The notes beneath the pieces are model-generated. The model was not told where the DNA came from. It made no database searches and saw nothing but the letters and a program-made list of their open reading frames with translations. A stretch of 64,000 nucleotides of DNA from Fimbriosthenelais zetlandica (taxonomy: Eukaryota), in NCBI GenBank assembly GCA_977030845.1, contig OZ365115.1:30628001-30692000 (forward strand), in the 5' to 3' direction. Shown one piece after another: positions 3,301-33,800 of this stretch. Every line of letters begins with the position of its first letter. Within the stretch, counting starts at the first letter, position 1. Both the position numbers and the translations under genes were made by a program.

Positions 3301-6300
3301 GTTTTTTATGGATACATTCAACTACATGTAGTTAGACGATTCTAGTGTGGTACCAGGATTAGTTTAATTATTCTTATGTTTATCTCTACAGATAATCATG
3401 CGGTATTGTCGATTCATCTTACCTGTCCAACCTTCTGGTAGATTATACCAAATTTAAATGTGTTTGCCAAGACGTGTTCATCATAATGGAGAATGAGTTC
3501 AGAGCCTTTAGGAAAGAGAACTGGATGAAACCGGTCTGTGGTTAAGTCCTCGCAGACAAGCTGAAAAAGATAACATGATGAATGATCAGATATTTCCAGG
3601 AATTTTAGAACCAGAATGAATCTATCTGAACAAGCCTTCATTAGGAGTTTATTGAAGGACCTGAAGGTTCAGTACAGTACTGACACTTGGAAAGAGTTTT
3701 GCCCTTTAGGCTCAGATTTTTGTTCAGTTAAAAGTAAGACAAACCAGAGTGAGTGACACTAACCTTGGCTAATTTGGCAGGACTCTGAGTGTCACTGATG
3801 GTACTCGTTCTGATGATCTCGTGTGTTGTACCGGATCGCTTTCGGAGGATGATCCGCATGTGTTCCTGGGATGAGATGACCTCTGACTTCATGGACATCA
3901 CTACTGGTCCGATCACTTCATCCAGAGCATAGAAGTTGAAGTGTTCCTGAGAGAAATATAAGAAATCCCATCATTTATCTTGTCTGAAGACTTTCAGTGG
4001 CATTTAACAATGGAGGGCTTCGATTCCATCTATTGGGGGTGAAGGGCCTTTCCACATGTTCAGTTTCAGGCTGTGGGGCTGGTCCCAGGCCAATTTGCCC
4101 ATCCTAGCTTTCAATTCTGGTAGCATCACATTATTCTGAGTATGCATTTTTGTTACCAAAGCATAATAGAAAGGGGTTGAGGGGTTATGAAAATGGTGAA
4201 AGGGGTTAATTTACCTTGCCACTGAAGTGTCTCCTGTAACATTTGGCTGTGTCATCTACCTCTAGTTTATACTTGGCGGTAGAAGATGTGAGACTGGCGG
4301 GAGGTGAAGTGTCCATGGCTTCCCTCTCCACTGTAAAGCCATCCATCCAATAACCACCTGAAGGTGGCAGCACCACTAAAGGATATGGCCCAGGCTTACT
4401 CAACATCTAGAAAAGAATATAGTAACTTATTACTCAGGTAAATGCTTTTAGGAGATTGCTAAAAGAGTGTACTTGAGATAGATGTATACTTCACAGCTAT
4501 GGGTAGAGTGTCAGAGATAGAGAGAGAGAGGAGAGGGAGGAGGGAGGGAGGGAGGGAGAGACAGGCAGGGGAAAGGCGTAAAAGGGAGAAGAAAGTTTTG
4601 AATTAAACTTCAATCAGATGTGTGCATATTGAATCAAAGACAAAGGTTAGCTATGCAATTCTAATTAAGACATGGGTCTTATACATACCTCTTTCAGGAG
4701 CATCTGTCCTTTGTGGGCATTCTTATTGGAGACCTCCTTGGGGCTTTTCGTTGGGCCACAATTGCTCTAGAAAAACAGAAAGGCAATCAGGAGGTCAGAT
4801 TAGAGCCAAAGTGGATTCATGAAGAATTAATCTTGCCCAACCAGCTTAACGGGAAAAGACTTTTCCTGGCTTAGTAGAAATTAATTGGAAAATTAATCGA
4901 AACCACGTCCCTGTCATTTTTATCCATCAAAACCAAATTATTTGTCCTCAAAATTGCAAGTAAAATAATTATGACAAATTATCAAAGTCTTTATATTAGC
5001 AATTACATAATTAGATGTCCAATCCATTGAAAATTAGAGAAGTGTCCATCGATTATTTGGTAAAAATGCTAGATTCAAAATTGTATTTAAATCAGCTACA
5101 AAAGCGTGATGCACCCAGTAGTACTTTTCGCAACACGCAAAAACAGTACACAACTTTGAAAGGGAAATTAAATCATAAAAAGTGAAAAAGGAAACTTAAA
5201 CAAGAACTGGAAAGTAAAACAAATATCATCTGACAAATACAAAGCAGACATCTGAAAATACAACGCACAGGATGTAATACTATTTTGTGTATAGAAACTG
5301 AACGTGGGACATTATATTTTGATAAATTTTAAGTTTTTTTTCCTTTCAAAAGAAGCACTTTTTCATCTCAAACACCTGCTATAGGCATCTTCCATTGAGA
5401 ATAGAGAATTATTACAATGTGTCTTCATGTAACGAGGTACTGAATGGGTATAGTGGGCGGTACTAGAATACAAATGCTTCCGAAACATCACTGGGGGAAA
5501 ACATACATTACATCCAACTATTCAAACTAAAATTGGCCATTCTACCTAGACGTGATTTAAATTCTTTCACAACACCTGGCAGGGGACTCTAAACTCCAAA
5601 GGGAAATATATAATTTATAAGGATGAACTGTAAAAGTGGAACACTGAATAGATAACTGTTTACTTCCCTTAAAATAGCACTGAATACGTAAGGGAATGAC
5701 TGGTAACTCCTAAATGAATAAACTATAGACATGGATAGGGGTAAATTGAACACGTGTTGATGTACGTATAGGGAGGATGTATGGCTGGTGGCCTAGGGCT
5801 ATAACAAGCAATGCAGGCAGCAGTTCAAACGGCGCAACATCTCATCCTGATCTAATACACTCTCACAATGGTGGAGAACTCTTCATTAACGGAGGTAGCC
5901 ATATTTTCTTAGCAACCACATATAAAACTTGCCTTCATGCCTATGCATTTTGTGCTTTCCAATTATTGCCTTGTAATTAGATTCTTCCATGTATGACATT
6001 CATAAATCTTAAAGAATCTTCAAAAGAATCAATATTTTAACGACAAAAGCAAGACCTAATAAAAGCTAGATTAATGGAGTAGATCTATCCAAATTTTACC
6101 CCCGTTATTTGATAGTTCTGACTAGAGAGAGCATATTCTGAGCATAATTCAACTATTTTCTCTAACAATTCGTCTATTGAAGCACCAAACGTGGGAAGGG
6201 CAATCCACTCTTTTCTGAGCATTGACATAATATACATTATGAAGATGAACCTTTTAAGATGAAAAATGTCATGAAAATTCGTAGGCCAAAAGCATGAAAG

Positions 6301-9300
6301 ATTTAAATTAAATAAATTTAATTTAATCCATTTCACTTGTCTTTAATAGTTAAACAAATAGGGATGAACACATGGAGGACACATATGTCAATGCCCAGGA
6401 GGAATGATTAAGACGAGGGGAATAACTATTAATATCATCATTAATATAAATCTATTATCTTCCCCGGCTGTATCACCTGGAGTGAGGAACTGGTGGTGGC
6501 AGTAACAGAGGTGCCCACCTGGCCACCAGCACCACCTGGTGGGCTGGAGGTGGTGCCAGCAGTGGTGGTGGTGGCGGGCTTAGAGGAAGAAGAGGAGGAA
6601 GAGGAGCTAGTGATCTGGGGAAGAGCAGGAAGGTAACACCGCTGGTCCTCCAAGCGTCGGCTCTGGAAGCAGACCAGCGCCTCCATGAAATCTGGGCTCT
6701 GGAACCAGGGCAACGGTGACAATTATTAATATGGATATTGCAGCTTCCAGGGGACATTAATGATACGGTGGCCCAGAAGTCTTAAATAATAAAAAGGGAC
6801 CTGTGGGAGGTTTAAACATTTTACACTACAGCTTTATTATTGATGCTCTGAAACCAGAGGAGACAACTCATTATAAAATAGATATTTCATGGTCCTTTTG
6901 AACTAAAATAACGGCTGGAGATCTGGGCCATCGTATACAAAGAGAAGGCAAACCAGGTGGAACTAATTATTGTTATCCGATTTCTCAATTCACGATTTGA
7001 CCCTAAACTCAATTAAATAAATGGTCTCGTCAGTTAATCACTCAACATCAATGCAACAAACCTAATCTGATGTACATGTTATTACGATTCGAACTCCTGA
7101 ATGCCAATTTCCTTTTCAAAATCGCTCTTAAGAATAGAGTGTGAATTACTAAGCCTCACAATAGCCCTTTTAAAGTAAAGGCGGTCTTTAACTATTGGCA
7201 ACAAACCTCTTACATTAATAATTACTTGGGCTACTTTAATAAAGGAAACTAATGCCCAAATATCAGCTTCGTATAGTGTATTACGTTAGGCCTATATAAA
7301 CCCTAACAACGACATATTATACTTTAAACTGATATAGGAATAATAATACATCAATGCTTAAAAATCCCATCTTAAATGTGAGTACTAAGAATATATGCTG
7401 CATCAGTATGGGAGTTAACGTCTCAATATGAACTGTATGGGAAGAATTAGGAAGTACTAGAGGTTGATAATAGTATTACCCATTAAGGATCATAGGGAAT
7501 TACATGTGAGTATTTATAGTGATCAATGGTACTAATGTCAGGCTAGGCATATTAGGCACATGTATATATAAACCACATAATTAATGACAAACAATCCTGA
7601 GTGTGAAGCGTGGGAGGGAGCTGAGATATGAGGAGCTAAACAAACCCATAATGAACCTATCGATCTGTATTATATATACATAAGTAATCCAGTAATGCTC
7701 TGCTTCATTTACTATTGGCGCAGATAATGTATCTATGTATGAAAACCTACTGTTGTCATGGGGAATTCTTATGAGTAGATATTTTTTAGGTTCCTGGTAA
7801 ATTAATTGTCAGAATTTGCACAAAACAATGCTATTCCCATGCAACAGGAATAAAGTTTACACTGTTTTCCATACATGATCTATCCGATAGATACTCATTA
7901 ATCTTTGACAGTTCATGTAGGGATTCAGAGGAAGTATGCTGATAAGAAAGTATCTGAGTATCCATCCTATCTCTCCTCTCACCAAGATTTCCAGGTATAT
8001 ATCATCCAGGCAAGTGTTTTCCTGACCTGGACTGAACAAACACCTATAGGGCCTACCTGACATCAATACAATGTATAAAGACATGTGATTGTCTGACATA
8101 TATGATTATCATATAATGATAAACTGCCAACAATATACCCATCAGAATGAATATATATATATTAAACAGAATAAATCATGTATTTTTTTAAAATTACCTT
8201 TGGAGGAAAGTCACTGGAAGTGCTTTTCACTTTCCACGTATACCTGCGGAGGATTTTCCTGGTGTATGGCTTATAATCCGTCATGGTTGGAGAACTTAAC
8301 AAATGTGGTACATGATAGTCAGTCCGTGCCATTCTACATGCACGGCGGTATTCTGGTAGAAAGCATGGAACCTAATGATGCATGTCTCCTCCCCACCTTC
8401 TGCCTCCCACCCTACAGGGCTTGGTTACCTGCCGTGCTTCCGGTCGTATCTAAGTGTTATATCAGTCACAGGTGTGTTTCAAACGTAATTATACACCCAT
8501 TAAAAACTGGTAGACAGGTGTTTTTGGAGATGAAAATAGTTATCTGTCTTCCTCAAAAGCACTGATTGATTCTCCTTTTTGATGGAGAACTGGATGTGCA
8601 TCATCTGAAGTTATTACCACCTTCAAAGTTTTATGAAGCATGTAATCAAGGCCTCACGAGTCAGTCTTATCTGGAATGCTCTATGAAGTCGTGCATTCTC
8701 TAACATTAATGGCCTACCTTTACAATGGGCTTTATGGTTAAATCTAAAGATGAAACAAGCTATTGAGCCTTACGAATCAGTGCCTCAATGCATGGATAAG
8801 TCCAAATGCAAGGATACCAGCTAGTACAGTATAGGGTATTTAAATTGCACTGTAGAGTGTGAATTTGCTCCAGTGTGTAAAACTATTCTTCGGGGATTTG
8901 CATTACACTGGTGAGTAGCCGCTGGAGTGTATAATTCAACTTGTCCCTTGTTATTGCTGATTTAAATGAATTCCAAAGTAAATGTCAGCCACAGGCTTCT
9001 ATATCAATCCCTCTGGTATTGTAAGTTAATACTGGAATGATATCAGACGAGGGAAATAAACTTGGTCCAAGGCACTGAAATTAAAGCTGAATCCTCGGGC
9101 CAATATAACTCCAATATAGGGCAAATACCAGGAGTATCATGTACATATGTCAAGGTAAAAACCCCTTATCAATCCTGACTCACTGTTTTATTGTATATAT
9201 GTCAATAAATCCAAACAATAACTCCATGGAGATCCAGCTTTAATAGATCTCAGCGGACCATTAAATGCACTGACTGTCCCTGGTACAAGTCGTATAACAT

Positions 9301-12300: not shown

Positions 12301-15300
12301 CTATTATGGCCCCCTGGAGAGGAGGCTGTGAACCTCAGGGGTCTCATGATATTTAGCTCCGTGTCTCCCCCTAGCGGATCCCCTTTCAGAACGAATAATT
12401 ATGACGTATAATATTACGGAATTACTGTATAGAATTACGAACACTTGTTGATTTTGTAACGTGCCTAAATACAATGTTTGAGAGAGAATATAGAAAATAG
12501 ACATAATTTAACCACACTGCTTCTACCACCTAATATTTATTACAACCTCGAAGATTATATGAGGACTTGAAGTTGGAGAATATTGCTTTTGTCATTGTTA
12601 TTTAACATTACCTAACGAATTCTTTGTTGGATAACAAGAAATGTTAAAGAAAAAAGGTAAATAATAATGTGCATGTAGATGCTTATATAACTGCTTGCAC
12701 ACCAATGTTACATACTGCTTTCACGCGAAATGTTCACCAAGCCCTCATCTTTAAAAGAAATATTTTCAAATCTTCTCATCCCTATGCGTCTTGATTAAGG
12801 CAGGAGGATTAGTGTTAATTAATCCTCGTTAATTTACTGATCCCTCGTTAGGGACGGCGCATGCATATCCCACTATAACATCCTTGGCTTAGGGTCTTAG
12901 TTTATCGCTTACCTATTGTTTGGGTGCGGAAGGCCGACACTTCAAAGTGGCTTTCCCGTTAAGTCGACCTAATCCCCAGTGTACATTAATAGTACCTAGT
13001 AGCTAATTGACCCAGATATGAGCCGTAATTTCTATAGATATAATATAAATATTATCACTCTGTTTTCACTGACCACCTTTGAAGCGCATTTCAGCTTAAA
13101 ATATGCTTTTTACAAAATGCTTAATTTATGACTCGTCAACAATAATAACATGAATTCTGTACACTCGAATATATATTAAAATGTCTCAACCTCGTGAATG
13201 AATATGAACACTTTTGAATTAAAAACACATATTATAGGTTAACTTACCTGGAAAAATGCGGGCATGTCGCAGCGTTGGTCATCGATTCTACTCCCTTGTA
13301 CTCTCTCAAGCATCTCAAAAAGATCAGCAGTCTGAAAAAATAATAACACAATGTTAACATATACTCTAAATATCATTAATCCTTTCGAATGGTAATGTCA
13401 TCCTGTGAATCAACAACATGGACCAGCTTCCTGTCAGTAAAACCTGTCTGTAAAAACCTATAAACTCCGGTAAGGTGCCAAAAAGAAAGTGGAAGTGTCA
13501 GGGGGAAACTTATTGAGTCTGAGACTTTCATTTTCACTAATCTAATACTGAGTGGATGGAAATAATGTTCAAGATTAACATAGAGTACTAGTATAGGACT
13601 TTTCTGTGCCTTGCCATAAAATATAAGTTATTTACATTTTCATCAGTAAGCGTGCAATACTGCGTAACAGGGGGTACTATTCGGTCCTTCATCCTGAATC
13701 TTTACCCAACAAGGGGTTCTAATAATCCAAATTATAATCCAACAACTGATGATAATAATCCTAGATGATGAGGGTAATCCTATATAAGTTAATGTCAATC
13801 CTGTCACTGATGGTACATTAGTTGTCCTTGCTGTATTGATGTGAAATGATGGTATAAATCCCTTGAGGGGTGGTTAATGGGTTACTATACATATCCTTCT
13901 CATGTCCACACTATAACCCTCCAGGTATCCCGACTAGACTGCCAGGTACAAACCCCCATGAATACACACCATGCTACCCTAGACAAGGGGTGGTCAGAAA
14001 GCTCCAAAACAATAAGCCCCCCTCCCACCTACTGTACAGCAAAGCCACCCGCTCCCACCTACACCCCCACCCGTCTACTTCGGGGAGGGTGGGTGGGAGG
14101 GTGCTTGGCTGGCTTATTGTTTTACTACCAGACCAAAATGGGGGCTGGGGGTTGATTGTTAGCATAGCTAGTTTTTACCAAGTTTTGAAACATGTTTGGA
14201 CAAGGCTAATAAAAGAGTATACATAGAGAACCGAAGAAGCGCCAGACGATTGACCTAACCCTGTCTTTAATCATGAAACCCCGTTACCAACAACTCATTA
14301 TCCCTTAGTAATTAACTACTTTTGATATACCACATGTATTGTCTATACATTAATTAACCCAAATAAACTATAACAATATTTATGTGTGTACTATATGGAC
14401 AATGCCACGGTAAAAATAAAATAATATCAAACCATAAGAGATCTTTTCCATACGAGAACAAAAATACTAGCTTCAGTTCAGGGAATTCATAAAATTTATG
14501 GGCAACATTAGCAAAGATACCCCATCCACCTTTTAACATTGACCCCCGCCCCCGCCCCCTCCCACCCACACCCCGCGGCCCTTATCCACACCTCTATACC
14601 CACACGACACCTGTGTATTGAGTGGAGGGTGTCTAACTGACCAGTACAATGCCCATCACTGACCACTCATTGTCTATGTCTGCATTCATTACGGACCGAC
14701 TCGCCTTCATGGCAGACAACACATAATGGCTTCACATAACTGAGGGTCTTCTTGAAGGAGAGAACCCGAGGTTGAAAACAATAACCAGTCTCGTGCTAGC
14801 TTCTTGTCATGTCTTTGTCCCCGAGCTTACACATTATTGTTTTGTGCAAAATATGTTTGTGCAACATGTTCCCATACGGGTCTTAGAATGAAGTGATTAA
14901 TTAAATAATGTATATTATTATTATTTGTTAGCATCAAACCATATCAAGGATAACTACATGAAAGGGCTAATTTTGAATGGTTGAAAGTACAAAGCGATAT
15001 GGGGTGGGGCAGAAAGAAGCACACTAATGGGAGATAAAAAAATAAAAGTAATATTTTCCTGGTCTTGGAACATTAGTTAACTTTGAAAAAAAAATCTAAA
15101 CTAAGGTTGAACTTATGAGTTGTCATTGCATTTTGCATTTTGCTTTATTTGATACATCTGATGTATGTGCAGACCTATATATTAGATGTCTAGGAGAAGA
15201 TCCAAGGCCAGGAGAGCCCAGCATCATAGTAATAAGAGCATTTTGTACGTTCATGTTTTCTGAACGATATTGAACCAAAATGCAAGGAAACAAGCTTCAA

Positions 15301-27300: not shown

Positions 27301-28497
27301 ACGCTGGCATCTTTAATCTTCGTAAACGAGTGAAAAATGATTTAACTTAAACTTGTCTGCGTGATAGCAATCCAATAAGGGAATAATGCCGACGGGGTAT
27401 ATTTTCCAATTTAAATCTTTAGTGTAAATGTCAGGGCTATAAATTGTTCATATATGAAATATATTTTTAACATATGAGATCGGAGGGGAAAATTTAATTA
27501 TAACATTCCAGTTGCCATGGAAATAGTTCGGTCAAGGTCATAAATCGGTAGGTGTCGCTTCAATGAGAGAAATATATAGTGAGACCCCTACAGGAGGTTG
27601 TCTGAACTAAGAGCAAAACTTTGACTCAGTAGTTCTATGTTTGTCCGTTGGGGGACGTGGCGGTGCATAATGGCTGAAGTCATTGTTTTCCATTCACTAT
27701 ACAATTCGGTCCCTTTTTACATGAACAACATAAACTATCAGAAATATATCATACTTGTTTTTCATAGATTACAAAAGGTTAGTTAAAAGAGAAATTAAAA
27801 GAAGAGAGATGGGGTAACGAAGCGTAGCCCAAGTCTAAGAGCTGCAATATAGTTCCATCTTTTTTTAAGCATATGGTTCTATTCAAACGACTAGGAATTA
27901 TGTTCACACTCATACGTCCTCTTGCCCATTATAAACTTTCACAAAAAGAGATAAAATAGGAGCCTCGAGGCGGCAAAAACAGGTAAAATCAAAGACTCGT
28001 CACATCACACAATGAGGATAATATTTCTTGCGTGTCTCTGCATCCTGGTTTGTTTCTAGCCAAAAAAGCAAGGCTGATGATGGAGAGAGGAGGAGGGTTG
28101 GTGGGAGAAAACATAGAAAGCAAAATAAACCACTCTCAGCAGAAGTGGCAGAAAAAAGGCACGCGTATAAACCAATTCACTGTAGGTGTATAATTCAAAA
28201 GGGACAGATATATCCCCAAGGAATATGCACATATCTAACATGAATTATTTAATTAAATGTCAATAATTTTACTTCCTAAATAGCCTAAGTGAATTCATAT
28301 CTTTCCACTCAGAAGACATCAAACTGAAAATTGTGCTCTATTTCACATAAAAATAATTAGTTCCTGAAAATCAATCTGTGAGTAGACGTACCTTAGCGCT
28401 CTCATTGGTGATGGTATCTTTCTGTAAGGCCGGGGGTGTCCCCGGGTCAGGGGGCGCATGGCCCTCACAGTAAAGCTGGCCGTCCATCGCCTGCTTC
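206..28497 (-). CDS. RAP1GAP: Rap1 GTPase-activating protein (Rap1GAP family) with two N-terminal GoLoco motifs; multi-exon, partial at the 3' end (continues beyond position 1), 5' end uncertain
   Basis: 14 exons joined with canonical GT-AG boundaries and consistent phases: 28497-28392, 13331-13248, 6698-6477, 4766-4689, 4406-4215, 3946-3764, 3560-3423, 3262-3162, 2846-2717, 2573-2418, 2311-2153, 1963-1694, 702-617, 319-206. Hallmark motifs: [42 protein letters not shown] (catalytic Asn thumb), [26 protein letters not shown]. GoLoco motifs and the lack of a visible PDZ point to RAP1GAP rather than SIPA1. Confidence 0.96.
617..702 (-). CDS. RAP1GAP: RAP1GAP exon ([28 protein letters not shown])
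   Basis: Acceptor tttttttctgacag| at 704-703, donor |GTAAGT at 616-615. 86 nt, phase 0 to 2, which exactly bridges the phases of the flanking exons. Confidence 0.85.
1694..1963 (-). CDS. RAP1GAP: RAP1GAP exon after the GAP domain ([15 protein letters not shown]...[20 protein letters not shown]...)
   Basis: Acceptor ttccccag| at 1965-1964, donor TTG|GTATGT at 1693-1692. 270 nt, phase 0-0. Resembles the ERTRAALLETLYEEL / GFFESFKR segment of vertebrate Rap1GAP. Confidence 0.9.
2153..2311 (-). CDS. RAP1GAP: RAP1GAP GAP-domain exon ([14 protein letters not shown]...ADRFAKLE)
   Basis: AG at 2313-2312, donor GAG|GTGAGT. 159 nt, phase 0-0. Near-identical to family motifs. Confidence 0.97.
2418..2573 (-). 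CDS. RAP1GAP: RAP1GAP catalytic exon ([34 protein letters not shown]...)
   Basis: Acceptor ctttcag| at 2575-2574, donor |GTAAGT at 2417-2416. 156 nt. Contains the Asn-thumb motif KRHIGND. Confidence 0.98.
2717..2846 (-). CDS. RAP1GAP: RAP1GAP GAP-domain exon ([43 protein letters not shown])
   Basis: AG at 2848-2847, donor CAG|GTAATT. 130 nt, phase 2 to 0. Confidence 0.97.
3162..3262 (-). CDS. RAP1GAP: RAP1GAP GAP-domain exon ([34 protein letters not shown])
   Basis: Acceptor tttttcag| at 3264-3263, donor |GTAAGT at 3161-3160. 101 nt, phase 0 to 2. Confidence 0.97.
3423..3560 (-). CDS. RAP1GAP: RAP1GAP exon ([46 protein letters not shown])
   Basis: Acceptor tttttcag| at 3562-3561, donor CAG|GTAAGA. 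138 nt, phase 0-0. Confidence 0.97.
3764..3946 (-). CDS. RAP1GAP: RAP1GAP dimerisation-domain exon ([35 protein letters not shown]...AKLAK)
   Basis: Acceptor tctctcag| at 3948-3947, donor AAG|GTTAGT. 183 nt, phase 0-0. Confidence 0.96.
4215..4406 (-). CDS. RAP1GAP: RAP1GAP exon ([23 protein letters not shown]...CYRRHFSGK)
   Basis: Acceptor tcttttctag| at 4408-4407, donor AAG|GTAAAT. 192 nt, phase 0-0. Confidence 0.96.
4513..4560. repeat. (GA)n/(GGGA)n purine microsatellite
   Basis: Directly visible. Reads as a CU-rich tract on the RAP1GAP pre-mRNA. Confidence 0.9.
4689..4766 (-). CDS. RAP1GAP: RAP1GAP linker exon ([26 protein letters not shown])
   Basis: Strong acceptor tttctgtttttctag| at 4768-4767, donor GAG|GTATGT at 4688-4687. 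78 nt, open, phase 0-0. Its terminal E|M junction sits where vertebrate Rap1GAP has HE|VL. Confidence 0.82.
6477..6698 (-). CDS. RAP1GAP: RAP1GAP exon: second GoLoco motif ([28 protein letters not shown]) plus Ser/Thr/Gly-rich linker
   Basis: Acceptor ggttccag| at 6700-6699, probable donor CAG|GTGATA at 6476-6475. 222 nt, phase 0-0. Q-x2-R-L-(D/E)-D-Q-R GoLoco signature. Confidence 0.85.
13248..13331 (-). CDS. RAP1GAP: RAP1GAP exon: first GoLoco motif ([28 protein letters not shown])
   Basis: Acceptor ttttttcag| at 13333-13332, donor CAG|GTAAGT at 13247-13246. 84 nt, phase 0-0. Closely resembles vertebrate Rap1GAP DLFEMIEKMQGSRMDEQRC. Confidence 0.93.
16503..16516. promoter_or_regulatory. 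RFX X-box (GTTTCCATGGCAAC)
   Basis: Exact match to GTTNCCATGGNAAC, next to an ACGTCA half-CRE and a CCACGCCC KLF/SP box (16577-16584). Confidence 0.55.
20150..20163 (+). promoter_or_regulatory. CTCF-like motif (GCACCAGGTGGCGG)
   Basis: One mismatch to CCRSYAGRKGGCRS. Confidence 0.35.
23560..23920 (+). mobile_element. Decayed non-LTR retrotransposon (LINE, CR1/L2/Jockey-type) reverse transcriptase fragment
   Basis: Translation gives FLAW...SQEEW...[11 protein letters not shown] (23779-23868), matching the LINE RT motif S-x-W-x3-SGVPQGSxLxP. Flanking sequence is frameshifted and degenerate. Confidence 0.5.
24626..24672. repeat. 19-bp tandem repeat, about 2.5 copies (TCTCTCAGGTTGAGCTATA)
   Basis: Exact unit repeats at 24626, 24645 and a partial copy at 24664. 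Confidence 0.9.
27511..27524. promoter_or_regulatory. RFX X-box-like (GTTGCCATGGAAAT)
   Basis: One mismatch to the consensus. A full CRE TGACGTCA lies at 27181-27188. Confidence 0.45.
28392..28497 (-). CDS. RAP1GAP: RAP1GAP N-terminal exon ([35 protein letters not shown])
   Basis: Strong acceptor tttgtgtctgttttcag| at 28499-28498, donor AAG|GTACGT at 28391-28390. 106 nt, GC-rich against an AT-rich background, ends in phase 0 compatible with the GoLoco1 exon. Internal GCGATGG at 28487 could be a start codon. Confidence 0.72.
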
Positions 28498-30858: not shown

Positions 30859-33800
30859 ACACTTCTCTATATATTCTATACTGACCACTCTCATCTGCCA
30901 GCCATTACATGGAGGCTCTGACCACTGTCTGGTATCTATAAATCTCCACGAGAGTGGTCTAACTGAAGTAACAAGGGGCGGGGTGTAGGCTGCTTATCCA
31001 TGTCATCATAATGACAAACATTCCCTATATTATACAAGCTTCTGTATGCCTCTTCCATTTAGGCAACTATAAGTTGGAGAAAGTTCTAATTTGTTTTTAC
31101 CTGGTAATTTCCCATCCAAGGTCAGGTGTGAAGATTACAATGTCTTTACATAGATAAGATAGGCGCAACATCCTTGACCTGATTAAACATAAGCATGACA
31201 AATATTTATTTTTTTATGGGGATTTACTTGTGTATGAATAGGTACGTCAGCCCACCCCTTTATCATATAACCTGGTAAAACACCGTCATAAGCATTAGAT
31301 ATACTATTAGCCCTCCATAAATCTAGATAAGTGTAGGCTTATGTAGAGCCCTCCTTATGTAAGGAGTATATATAATGTCTGAGAGACTAAAGGCACATCT
31401 CAGTGAGCTTGGCAGGTCCTCTTAATCCATACATTTATATAAATAATACCGGTACTTTACTAACACACATACATGTCACATCTCGGCCCTATCTTATACT
31501 GCAGCATCCTATTCAAGAGGATGCATTTATTCGACACTTACAAGGGATGAGGGGAATTATTTATGCTATTTTCCATACTATCAAAGTAACTTATATTTCC
31601 TTAGATAAGACTATAATATTCCAATTAATACATATAATATAAGACAGTATGTATACATGGAGAACACAATGTCCCAAGACTGATATCAACAGAAATTATT
31701 CAGAAAAGCCACCTGCATATCGAAACCATATCTCATATTTTACAACTCGGACATATCTCGTTTAAAGTGGCTTGTTGGTAACCACTTATCTAATCATTAT
31801 CAGTTTCTCAGTATAAAAATCATTATCAGTATAAAAAAACGCTTTCCATGGAGATCGCATGTGAGTAGGGTTTAACCTTAAGTTAACAGATCTAGACTAA
31901 TAGTGTGTGACAACGCATATAATAAACATCAAATCAAAGTCCAGTATATCAGAGAGCCACACACACCTCCCCTCAACCTGGACCCCTTTTAACTAGCGAT
32001 AACAACCCAGTGATTGATGTCTCCTGAGTAAACCAAGTCACTCAATAAAACATATCTAGTCTCTTAAGCACCCATCTTTTACCCACCACAGGAATGATCA
32101 GAGGATCAGAGATATCCATTGTTAGGTCCCTTAGTTATTCCAACGACTATACAATGGTAAACTCAAGACCATTTTTCAACTAGTATATCACATTAGTAAA
32201 GATTATCACTGTATCAATATGTTTAAAAAATTGGTCCATTCCAGAGTTAAGACTGATATTATTTAACTTATTTAACTATACTTACAGCTCGCCCATGACC
32301 ACATGCCATTTGGTAAAATGTCTTTCCATCTTTAATGATTGAATTGTCTCTAATCACAAGACCTGATCATATGACAGGGCAACAATGAGCTAATTACAAT
32401 GCATCATCCAAATATGTAAAAAGGAAATGATGTAATCCAAAATTGGCTCGTGTTGATGAAATTTATGATGGATTTTTCGTGATCATCCTCTGTTAATGTG
32501 TCCCTATTGACTCTAAATTCTTTCTAAAAATGATTTCTTGATTAATATATCAACAATCAGGTTGAGTATCCTTTATATCTTAGAGTAAAATTTATATTAT
32601 GTGAAAGCCATTACTGCTTAAATACTATCCAAATATGTATGAATTTTTTATGAAGTACACATGTATGATTTGCTCGAGTAACAGTCCATGATATGTTGGT
32701 GGTAATTTCATGTGAAATTCTGATCAATCTTTTGAGTTAATCCTTGCGTGTTTGATACTGAATTACTGGGTATATGTGGAGATATGTATGTATAGAGCCT
32801 CCTCCAGTGTCTATATGATCGACTCCTAGTGGTATCGTGCTCATGGTATACTACAGAGAGAGAGGGATATGAACTGATATGGTATCACTCACTTCTGGAA
32901 CCACCACCAACCACAACCTCCTAGTCCTGGACTTCATCCTTCTACACTCCCCCCAAAATCTGCCTCCCCTTTCCTCATCATGTTGCTCGCCCTTTCCCTT
33001 CTCTTCCTTCTTCCTAATTACTTCATCAACATTTTCTTTTTCTTTCATTCGATCCACAGCCTTTCCTTCCTCCCCACGCTGTATATCCCCATTCTTAGAA
33101 GTTCCTTTGGTCGATGCATTCAAGACGTCCATCTATAGGTCTTACTGATATAGTTTCAATACCTCTATACTTGGTATGAACGTGATAAAGGAATAGACCA
33201 TATAAAAATGTTGGCCTAGATGAGATGAATATCCCATTATTTTGTGGTTGCAGACGGAAATACGTCATATATGTGCGAAAATAGCTGAGGGGGGAGTGTT
33301 GGGGGAGTTCACGGATATGAAGTGCAACAGATGTAAACTAGTACACCGTCACTTCCGGTATTGCTACGTTCGCTTTTCTTCTATAATATTTCTGTTCAAA
33401 GATACTGCAAGATACGAGTCTGTACGACAGTAAACTCAAGGCAATCGATAATCTTCATGACTGGGAAATTGAGCTTGATTCGAGGACTTTCAATTGTCTC
33501 ATATAAATATCTCATACATTTATATGTTAGCATCGTAAGCCTATATAATATTGCTGAATGAATGGTTCCATTGCAGCTCCTCTCTCTGCATGCTATATTT
33601 TGCCTGCATGGCGTGGGCATTTGAAGTTGTCAAAGGAGAAGGTGGAGGAAGGAATGGAAGCTCTTAGCTGCCATCTTCCCCCCAAATCACAGGGATTTGT
33701 GCCAGTCACCTGAGTCTACTGAGCCAGAAGAAGATTTAGCTCGGGGCTACTCCGGAATCTATTTCTATTTTGGGATCATTTGTTCTCTCTTTTACTTGTT

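What the first reader, a model, noticed from the sequence alone, without database searches (positions are those of the whole stretch)
6590..6720. Dual-coded alternative acceptor that could switch GoLoco2 on or off (0/1/1/2-GoLoco isoforms)
Seen: the codons for L-P-A-L-P-Q at the end of GoLoco2 read CTTCCTGCTCTTCCCCAG|ATC. This is a 15-nt, mostly pyrimidine tract plus CAG, and it looks stronger than the acceptor in front of the motif (gttgccctggttccag). Splicing to 6614 removes exactly the 84-nt GoLoco2 in frame. The GoLoco1 exon is an independent phase 0-0 cassette. Inference: two binary choices could give no GoLoco, GoLoco1 only, GoLoco2 only or both, tuning G-protein coupling of Rap inactivation. 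The same bases would serve as protein code and splice signal.
Basis: partly seen in the sequence, partly recalled or inferred. Interest (0 to 1): 0.75.

Follow-up and report, generated by a model that had tools for sequence, protein, structure and literature searches.

The report
Old exon end inside GoLoco2 exon
The acceptor-like CAG inside this Rap1GAP exon sits exactly where related animals end a separate 84-base GoLoco2 exon, and those relatives switch GoLoco2 off by skipping the whole exon, so the proposed dual-coded internal splice site is unsupported.

Summary
On the minus strand, exon 6698-6477 begins with an 84-nt GoLoco2 unit that ends CTTCCTGCTCTTCCCCAG|ATC. Splicing to 6614 would remove that unit in frame.

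A second GoLoco that splicing switches on or off is real and old. RefSeq isoforms with and without a 27-31 aa GoLoco2 block exist in seven mollusc genera and a brachiopod. In every genomic locus I read, GoLoco2 is its own exon followed by GT. In the annelid Paralvinella it is an 84-nt, 28-codon exon whose end falls exactly at window 6615|6614.

So the CAG is best read as the old exon end. The 138-nt Ser/Thr tail (6614-6477) has no counterpart in the other species compared and is unique in this genome.

The nearest relative's mRNA joins GoLoco1 directly to a 78-nt exon (4766-4689). It therefore lacks the whole 222-nt exon, not just GoLoco2.

Acceptors in this gene are T-rich. On a matrix built from them, 6698 is the weakest real site and 6614 is unremarkable.

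No RNA run could be listed, so use of 6614 is untested, and I rate it unlikely (about 0.1).

The parts
28392..28497 (-). Upstream coding exon (…[35 protein letters not shown]). It ends in phase 0 at AAG|gtacgt.
   Evidence: It matches the relative's mRNA L008 at 86% nt identity.
13248..13331 (-). GoLoco1 exon, 84 nt, phase 0-0 ([28 protein letters not shown]), bounded by cag| and CAG|gtaagt.
   Evidence: Pfam GoLoco E 2e-11. It is present in the relative's mRNA.
6699..6720 (-). Acceptor region of the GoLoco2 exon (gtcaccgttgccctggttccag). It is C-rich and the weakest acceptor of the gene on the gene-trained matrix.
   Evidence: Its leave-one-out score is -3.7, against 0.1 to 14.6 for the other 13 acceptors.
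6477..6698 (-). 222-nt phase 0-0 exon made of the GoLoco2 unit plus the Ser/Thr-rich tail. It is probably a cassette exon skipped as a whole.
   Evidence: The whole exon is absent from the closest relative's mRNA.
6615..6698 (-). GoLoco2 unit, 84 nt or 28 codons ([28 protein letters not shown]). It is colinear with the separate 84-nt GoLoco2 exons of Paralvinella and of contig L012.
6615..6632 (-). The flagged tract CTTCCTGCTCTTCCC plus CAG. It is read here as the relic of the ancestral exon end (the exon side of a lost 5' splice site). It is an untested candidate internal acceptor.
6477..6614 (-). 138-nt Ser/Thr/Gly/Pro-rich exon tail ([18 protein letters not shown]…SSSLQ). It has no counterpart in the other species compared and occurs once in this genome.
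6475..6476 (-). GT of the donor CAG|gtgata that now closes the extended exon. It departs from the gtaagt that most of the gene's donors carry.
4689..4766 (-). 78-nt phase 0-0 exon ([26 protein letters not shown]). It is the exon that follows GoLoco2 in relatives, and it is joined directly to GoLoco1 in the relative's mRNA.
4215..4406 (-). Next constitutive exon ([20 protein letters not shown]…).

Best explanation
The gene is a minus-strand Rap1GAP of an annelid-like animal. It carries the two tandem GoLoco motifs found across molluscs, annelids, brachiopods and nemerteans. GoLoco2 was ancestrally an 84-nt phase 0-0 cassette exon. In this lineage its donor GT is gone (CAG|AT), and the exon now runs 138 nt further, through a Ser/Thr-rich stretch, to CAG|gtgata at 6477. 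The flagged pyrimidine tract plus CAG is therefore the old exon end. Its pyrimidines come mostly from the Leu-Pro-Ala-Leu-Pro codons. GoLoco2 is most likely switched on or off by including or skipping the whole 222-nt exon, helped by its weak C-rich acceptor and weak donor, and not by the internal AG at 6616-6615. Shown here: the anatomy, the exon boundaries in relatives, the isoforms in relatives, and one relative mRNA that lacks the exon. Inferred: that this species itself skips the exon, and that 6614 is not used.
For: The gene is identified by Pfam hits to GoLoco (twice), Rap-GAP_dimer and Rap_GAP, and it is the only copy in the 447-Mb genome.

GoLoco2 is a separate exon followed by GT in Littorina (87 nt), Batillaria (93 nt), Paralvinella (84 nt) and marine contig L012 (84 nt). 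The Paralvinella and L012 exons have 28 codons and end at the position equal to window 6615|6614.

The exon after GoLoco2 in Paralvinella (…ICQLKE) is the homologue of window 4766-4689 (…QMLLKE), so the Ser/Thr tail is an addition. It is unique in this genome.

RefSeq isoforms with and without a 27-31 aa GoLoco2 block exist in Littorina, Biomphalaria, Haliotis, Patella, Liolophura, Saccostrea, Gigantopelta and Lingula.

The closest relative's mRNA (L008, run ERR14707600) is 93% identical in protein in the tree alignment and 77-90% identical in exon DNA. It joins GoLoco1 straight to the 78-nt exon. A second related transcript, P0217, also has GoLoco1 only.

The 6698 acceptor is the weakest of 14 in the gene, which fits a regulated exon. 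The Rap1GAP tree places the window with annelids (98/92 support).
Against: There is no RNA evidence from this species, because no run was listed. It is not shown that the relative's genome holds the 222-nt exon, so its mRNA may reflect absence of the exon and not skipping. The window's tract is more pyrimidine-rich (14 of 15) than any orthologous exon end (9-12), and all five third positions are pyrimidines (p about 0.046). That leaves room for some selection on the tract. The acceptor matrix rests on only 13-14 sites. The origin of the tail (donor loss with read-through, expansion of a low-complexity run, or intron loss) is not resolved.
Confidence: 0.68

Rival explanations
1. The AG at 6616-6615 is a regulated alternative acceptor, so the same bases code for L-P-A-L-P-Q and also serve as a splice signal. 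Its use gives an isoform that keeps the Ser/Thr tail but lacks GoLoco2.
For: The tract has 14 of 15 pyrimidines plus CAG, which is rarer than 99% of AGs on this strand. The deletion would be in frame at 84 nt. The tract is richer in pyrimidines than orthologous exon ends (14 against 9-12). All five third positions are pyrimidines (p about 0.046). The competing acceptor at 6698 is weak. A possible branch site (GTTAC) lies about 19 nt upstream, with no AG between it and the CAG (read).
Against: No transcript, in this lineage or any relative, shows this junction. Relatives omit GoLoco2 by skipping a separate exon, and the nearest relative's mRNA drops the tail as well. This gene's real acceptors are T-rich, and 6614 scores -1.9 to 0.85 against a median near 7. 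In the gene span, 534 of 1880 AGs score as high. The CAG is accounted for by the ancestral exon end.
Confidence: 0.12
2. In this species the 222-nt exon is constitutive. GoLoco2 is always present, and neither skipping nor the internal acceptor is used. Extension of the exon went along with loss of the ancestral regulation.
For: The exon keeps an open frame and an intact GoLoco core, with 18 of 28 residues identical to Paralvinella. The nemerteans Lineus and Tubulanus show no GoLoco2-less model among 12-13 isoforms each.
Against: The exon has the weakest acceptor in the gene and a weak donor. Two related transcripts lack GoLoco2. Skipping is modelled in eight other genera.
Confidence: 0.12
3. 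The exon is a decaying or unused relic. GoLoco2 is no longer expressed in this lineage, and the open frame has persisted by chance in low-complexity sequence.
For: Both related transcripts lack it. Its acceptor is poor. The region is also open in another frame. The Pfam score is just under the gathering cut-off.
Against: All GoLoco core residues (F, L, Q, R, E-D-Q-R) are kept, and the unit is 63% identical to the annelid orthologue, about the same as the catalytic domain. The AG and GT boundaries and phase 0-0 are intact.
Confidence: 0.06

Closest known systems
Cassette-encoded second GoLoco of lophotrochozoan Rap1GAP (RefSeq models, e.g. Littorina saxatilis XP_070207589.1 with it and XP_070207591.1 without; also Biomphalaria, Haliotis, Patella, Liolophura, Saccostrea, Gigantopelta, Lingula)
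   Same: The order is the same: GoLoco1 exon, then GoLoco2 unit, then linker exon, then the PGPYP exon. The GoLoco2 core is the same ([16 protein letters not shown]). The unit is in frame in phase 0-0, and the window's 84-nt length matches Paralvinella and L012.
   Different: In those species GoLoco2 is a free-standing 81-93 nt exon with its own donor. Here the donor is missing and the exon carries an extra 138-nt Ser/Thr-rich tail.
Mammalian Rap1GAP1 splice variants (Rap1GAP1a with a truncated GoLoco, Rap1GAP1b/Rap1GAPII with a full one)
   Same: Alternative splicing at the N-terminus changes the GoLoco content of a Rap GTPase-activating protein. In mammals this changes which nucleotide state of Gαo is bound (PMC12329598).
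   Different: Mammals vary a single motif (full or truncated) through N-terminal extensions. Here a whole second motif is added or omitted as an internal exon. No binding data exist for the second motif.
Multi-GoLoco proteins (GPSM1/AGS3, GPSM2/LGN/Pins, PCP2, GPSM3)
   Same: They carry tandem GoLoco motifs in one polypeptide, separated by short linkers. Proteins of this kind turned up in the metagenome scan.
   Different: Those are scaffold proteins without a Rap-GAP domain, and their repeats are not known to me as single-exon cassettes (from my own knowledge).
Alternative 3' splice sites inside coding exons (dual-use sequence)
   Same: The site has an AG preceded by a pyrimidine run inside an open frame, and the distance is in frame.
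   Different: No junction evidence exists, the site is not conserved as an acceptor in relatives, and its composition is unlike this gene's own acceptors.

Membership tests
Rap1GAP family (Rap_GAP PF02145 plus Rap-GAP_dimer PF21022) | A Rap/Ran-GAP catalytic domain preceded by the dimerisation domain | tested here: met
   Pfam hits: PF21022 at E 6.5e-23 on 3731-3970, and PF02145 at E 6.4e-15 and 1e-8 on 2699-2872 and 2123-2311. The protein is 93% identical to a related full-length transcript product.
GoLoco/GPR motif (PF02188) | A motif of about 19 residues with F..L….Q..R and the acidic-acidic-Gln-Arg end | tested here: met
   GoLoco1 scores 43.5 bits. GoLoco2 scores 24.9 bits against a gathering score of 25.1, so it falls just short by score, but all invariant columns D, F, L, Q, R, E, D, Q, R are present.
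GoLoco/GPR motif (PF02188) | Binds Gαi/o-GDP and slows nucleotide release | not testable with these tools
   This needs a binding or GDI assay. No complex prediction was run.
Cassette (skipped) exon | Length divisible by 3 with matching phases, so that skipping keeps the frame | tested here: met
   The exon 6698-6477 is 222 nt and the flanking exons are in phase 0. The relative's mRNA reads …AFFQ|TNCGPAK… in frame.
Cassette (skipped) exon | Transcripts both with and without the exon in the same species | tested here: inconclusive
   This is shown for eight other genera through RefSeq isoforms. For this lineage there is only a transcript without the exon, and it comes from a relative. No run of the species was listed.
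Cassette (skipped) exon | Splice sites weaker than those of constitutive neighbours | tested here: met
   The acceptor has a leave-one-out score of -3.7, the lowest of 14, and the donor is gtgata where most others are gtaagt. The training set is small.
   The look-up of sequencing runs listed no run, so read laying could not be used. No database protein shows the predicted product.
   Real acceptors hold 8-13 T and 0-4 C in positions -20 to -4. The 6614 site holds 6 T and 9 C, and scores -1.9 to 0.85, within the lower part of all AGs.
   In four orthologues this position is an exon end followed by GT. Their tracts have 9-12 of 15 pyrimidines and mixed third positions. No orthologue with the extended exon was available, so the strict form of this test remains open.

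The most novel reading that the evidence does not exclude
After the GoLoco2 cassette lost its donor and fused with a new Ser/Thr-rich extension, the former exon end (Leu/Pro codons plus CAG) was taken over as an internal acceptor. One exon would then give three outputs: GoLoco2 plus tail, tail only, or neither. That would be a 5' splice-site remnant turned into a 3' splice site while still coding for protein.
Probability: 0.1. Interest if true: 0.55.

Novelty: new variant of a known kind. Interest (0 to 1): 0.27.

Why it matters
The dual-coded acceptor itself has no support and should not be carried forward without RNA data.

What the follow-up did show is modestly useful. Rap1GAP of molluscs, annelids, brachiopods and nemerteans carries a second GoLoco motif on a small in-frame exon. 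Many species' gene models include or omit that exon. I found no paper in the held library describing this.

In mammals, splicing that alters the single GoLoco of Rap1GAP1 changes which state of Gαo it binds (PMC12329598). A switchable second motif would therefore be a natural system for asking how the number of G-protein binding sites tunes Rap inactivation.

The window adds a derived case in which the cassette lost its donor and gained a Ser/Thr-rich tail.

Tried and rejected
RNA evidence. Two run searches (window:6300-6900 as rna, window:1600-6900 as any) listed no run. Read laying therefore had no valid run id and was not used. I did not pass it ERR14707600, because that id came from another tool and not from the look-up of sequencing runs.

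Own-genome paralogues. Neither the GoLoco2 exon nor the Rap-GAP dimer exon has a second copy. The Ser/Thr tail is single-copy, so it is not an exonised repeat. Tandem Repeats Finder sees only a short 9-12 nt Ser-codon repeat at 6582-6606.

Searches for a closer relative that holds the exon. A representative search with the conserved exon gave nothing above about 50% identity except short fragments. A word search with the relative's N-terminus found no other isoform of that lineage. A metagenome scan with the 74-aa exon found nothing. A scan with a GoLoco2 alignment found one mollusc-like genomic exon (L012), and the other hits were unrelated tandem-GoLoco proteins of the AGS3/LGN kind. Lineus DNA was not on record.

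Rejected ideas. A U12-type AT-AC intron starting at 6614 does not fit, because ATCACT does not resemble ATATCC. LIM-domain exons were not detected in the window.

Literature. No paper on a two-GoLoco Rap1GAP turned up.

Full report
**Observation**

Read on the minus strand, the intron ends …gtcaccgttgccctggttccag at 6699. The exon begins at 6698 and codes [28 protein letters not shown], ending CTT CCT GCT CTT CCC CAG at 6615. The sequence continues ATC ACT AGC TCC…, a Ser/Thr/Gly/Pro-rich run, up to CTC CAG|gtgata, with the last exon base at 6477. So 6698-6615 is 84 nt and the whole exon is 222 nt.

Pfam finds a GoLoco motif in this exon (E 1.4e-5; 24.9 bits, just under the 25.1 gathering score). 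It finds a stronger one in the 84-nt exon 13331-13248 (E 2e-11). It also finds Rap-GAP_dimer and Rap_GAP in the downstream exons.

**Is the tract more than chance?**

By pyrimidine count, yes. The tract has 14 of 15 pyrimidines before a CAG, which only 12 of 3818 AGs on this strand reach.

By the gene's own standard, no. I defined 14 introns by aligning a related mRNA. Their acceptors are T-rich, with 8-13 T and 0-4 C in positions -20 to -4. The 6698 site has 5 T and 7 C, and the 6614 site has 6 T and 9 C.

On a position matrix built from these sites:
- Leave-one-out scores of the real acceptors run from 0.1 to 14.6.
- The 6698 site scores -3.7, the weakest of all.
- The 6614 site scores -1.9, or 0.85 when 6698 is included in the training set.
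- In the gene span, 534 of 1880 AGs score at least as high as 6614.

The matrix rests on few sites and is only a rough guide. All five third-codon positions of the tract are pyrimidines. With 54% pyrimidines at four-fold sites elsewhere in the gene, that has a chance of about 0.046, uncorrected for choosing the site after seeing it.

**What the gene is**

The genome is 447 Mb and has a single Rap1GAP. A maximum-likelihood tree of Rap1GAP proteins places the window with annelids (Paralvinella and Ridgeia; support 98/92). Its nearest rows are an unnamed transcript (P0213, contig L008, run ERR14707600; 93% protein identity) and a marine metatranscriptome sequence, P0217.

**The two-GoLoco architecture is old**

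Tandem GoLoco1 and GoLoco2 occur in:
- gastropods (Littorina, Batillaria, Biomphalaria, Haliotis, Patella, Gigantopelta);
- a chiton (Liolophura);
- oysters (Saccostrea and others);
- Octopus;
- a brachiopod (Lingula);
- nemerteans (Lineus, Tubulanus);
- the annelid Paralvinella.

The arthropods, echinoderms and lamprey in the same hit lists show one motif.

**How relatives switch GoLoco2**

RefSeq isoform sets contain forms with and without a block of 27-31 residues that is exactly GoLoco2. This holds in Littorina, Biomphalaria, Haliotis, Patella, Liolophura, Saccostrea, Gigantopelta and Lingula, and further oysters show the same pattern.

I read the DNA at four loci. In each, GoLoco2 is its own exon with AG in front and GT behind:

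| Locus | Exon length | Exon end |
|---|---|---|
| Littorina | 87 nt | …GTC AAG\|gtgccc |
| Batillaria | 93 nt | …TCA CAG\|gtgctt |
| Paralvinella | 84 nt | …ACA AAG\|gtagtt |
| Marine metagenome contig L012 | 84 nt | …TTA CAG\|gttcga |

The Paralvinella and L012 exons have 28 codons and align without gaps to the window's 28 codons. Their exon end therefore corresponds exactly to window 6615|6614.

It follows that the 138 nt from 6614 to 6477 are an addition in this lineage. The old donor is gone (CAG|AT), and the exon now closes at a weak donor further on. The tail is unique in the genome, so it is not an exonised repeat. I cannot tell whether it arose by read-through into the intron, by growth of a low-complexity run, or by intron loss.

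**Evidence from the nearest relative**

The mRNA L008 matches the window exon by exon at 77-90% nucleotide identity. It joins the GoLoco1 exon directly to the 78-nt exon (…AFFQ|TNCGPAKSPKEV…). It therefore lacks the whole 222-nt exon, GoLoco2 and tail together, and not only the 84 nt. P0217, also a transcript, likewise has GoLoco1 only.

I could not show that the relative's genome holds the exon, so reading this as skipping is an inference. That inference is supported by the deep conservation of the cassette and by the window exon's intact frame and motif (18 of 28 residues identical to Paralvinella).

**Reading**

The pyrimidine tract plus CAG is best explained as the former end of an 84-nt cassette exon. 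Exon ends are commonly CAG or AAG (from my own knowledge), and the preceding residues here are Leu-Pro-Ala-Leu-Pro, whose codons begin with pyrimidines.

Orthologous exon ends are also fairly pyrimidine-rich (9-12 of 15), and so is the GoLoco1 exon end of the window itself (11 of 15, CCCGCATTTTTCCAG|gt). The window's 14 of 15 is the highest seen.

The most likely switch in this species is inclusion or skipping of the whole 222-nt exon, which has the gene's weakest acceptor and a weak donor. Inclusion would add a second Gαi/o-binding motif and a Ser/Thr-rich spacer. In mammals, splice variants that change the GoLoco of Rap1GAP1 change its preference for Gαo-GDP or Gαo-GTP (PMC12329598). A functional effect is therefore plausible but untested.

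**The 0/1/1/2 scheme**

Forms with both motifs and forms with GoLoco1 only are well supported in relatives. A GoLoco2-only form appears only in Octopus, through a different first exon. No model skips the GoLoco1 exon alone, and I saw no GoLoco-free form made by splicing these two exons out. The oyster isoforms whose precomputed Pfam list shows no GoLoco do carry GoLoco1.

**What could not be done**

No sequencing run was listed for this DNA, so junction reads could not be counted and read laying was not used. No closer genome with the extended exon was found, so synonymous constraint on the tract in the relevant lineage is untested.

**Verdict**

I give about 0.68 to the relic-exon-end and whole-exon-cassette reading, and about 0.12 to real use of 6614.

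My results agree with that note and show that the duplication predates the split of annelids, molluscs, brachiopods and nemerteans.

Noticed in passing
window 4689-4766 (-): This 78-nt phase 0-0 exon ([26 protein letters not shown]) lies between the GoLoco2 exon and the PGPYP exon. The true downstream partner of donor 6477, and of a skip from 13248, is 4766.
   Followed up: yes
window 32286-32333 (-): A short exon coding MERHFTKWHVVMGEL| matches the 5' end of the relative's mRNA (73% aa identity). It is probably an alternative first coding exon. The ATG in exon 28497-28392 is then internal. No LIM-domain exons, which the long isoforms of relatives carry, were detected in the window.
   Followed up: partly
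window 6517-6521 (-): Inside the Ser/Thr tail there is an in-frame donor-like site, GGC CAG|GTGGGC, after 6519. It would give a 180-nt exon. A second site, CCACCAG|GTGGTG, is out of frame. Neither was tested.
   Followed up: no
window, all 14 acceptors of the gene (319 to 28497, -): Acceptor tracts in this gene are strongly T-rich, with 8-13 T and 0-4 C in positions -20 to -4. A generic pyrimidine count therefore overrates C-rich sites in this genome.
   Followed up: partly
window 4500-4570 (-): There is a CT-rich and CCCT-rich low-complexity run (ctccctccctccctcc…ctctctctct) in the intron just upstream of exon 4406.
   Followed up: no
P0370, P0194, P0380 against their sister isoforms (Lineus, Tubulanus); P0175 (Magallana); P0209 (Octopus): Other alternative pieces surround the two motifs in relatives. 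Nemerteans have an 8-aa or 22-aa linker between GoLoco1 and GoLoco2. One Magallana gigas isoform has a 13-aa extension after GoLoco2. Octopus has a Ser/Asn-rich spacer of about 90 aa between the motifs.
   Followed up: partly
whole window / G000: The Rap1GAP tree places the window's organism with annelids. The genome is 447 Mb in 79 contigs, and the window lies at C25:30628001-30692000.
   Followed up: partly
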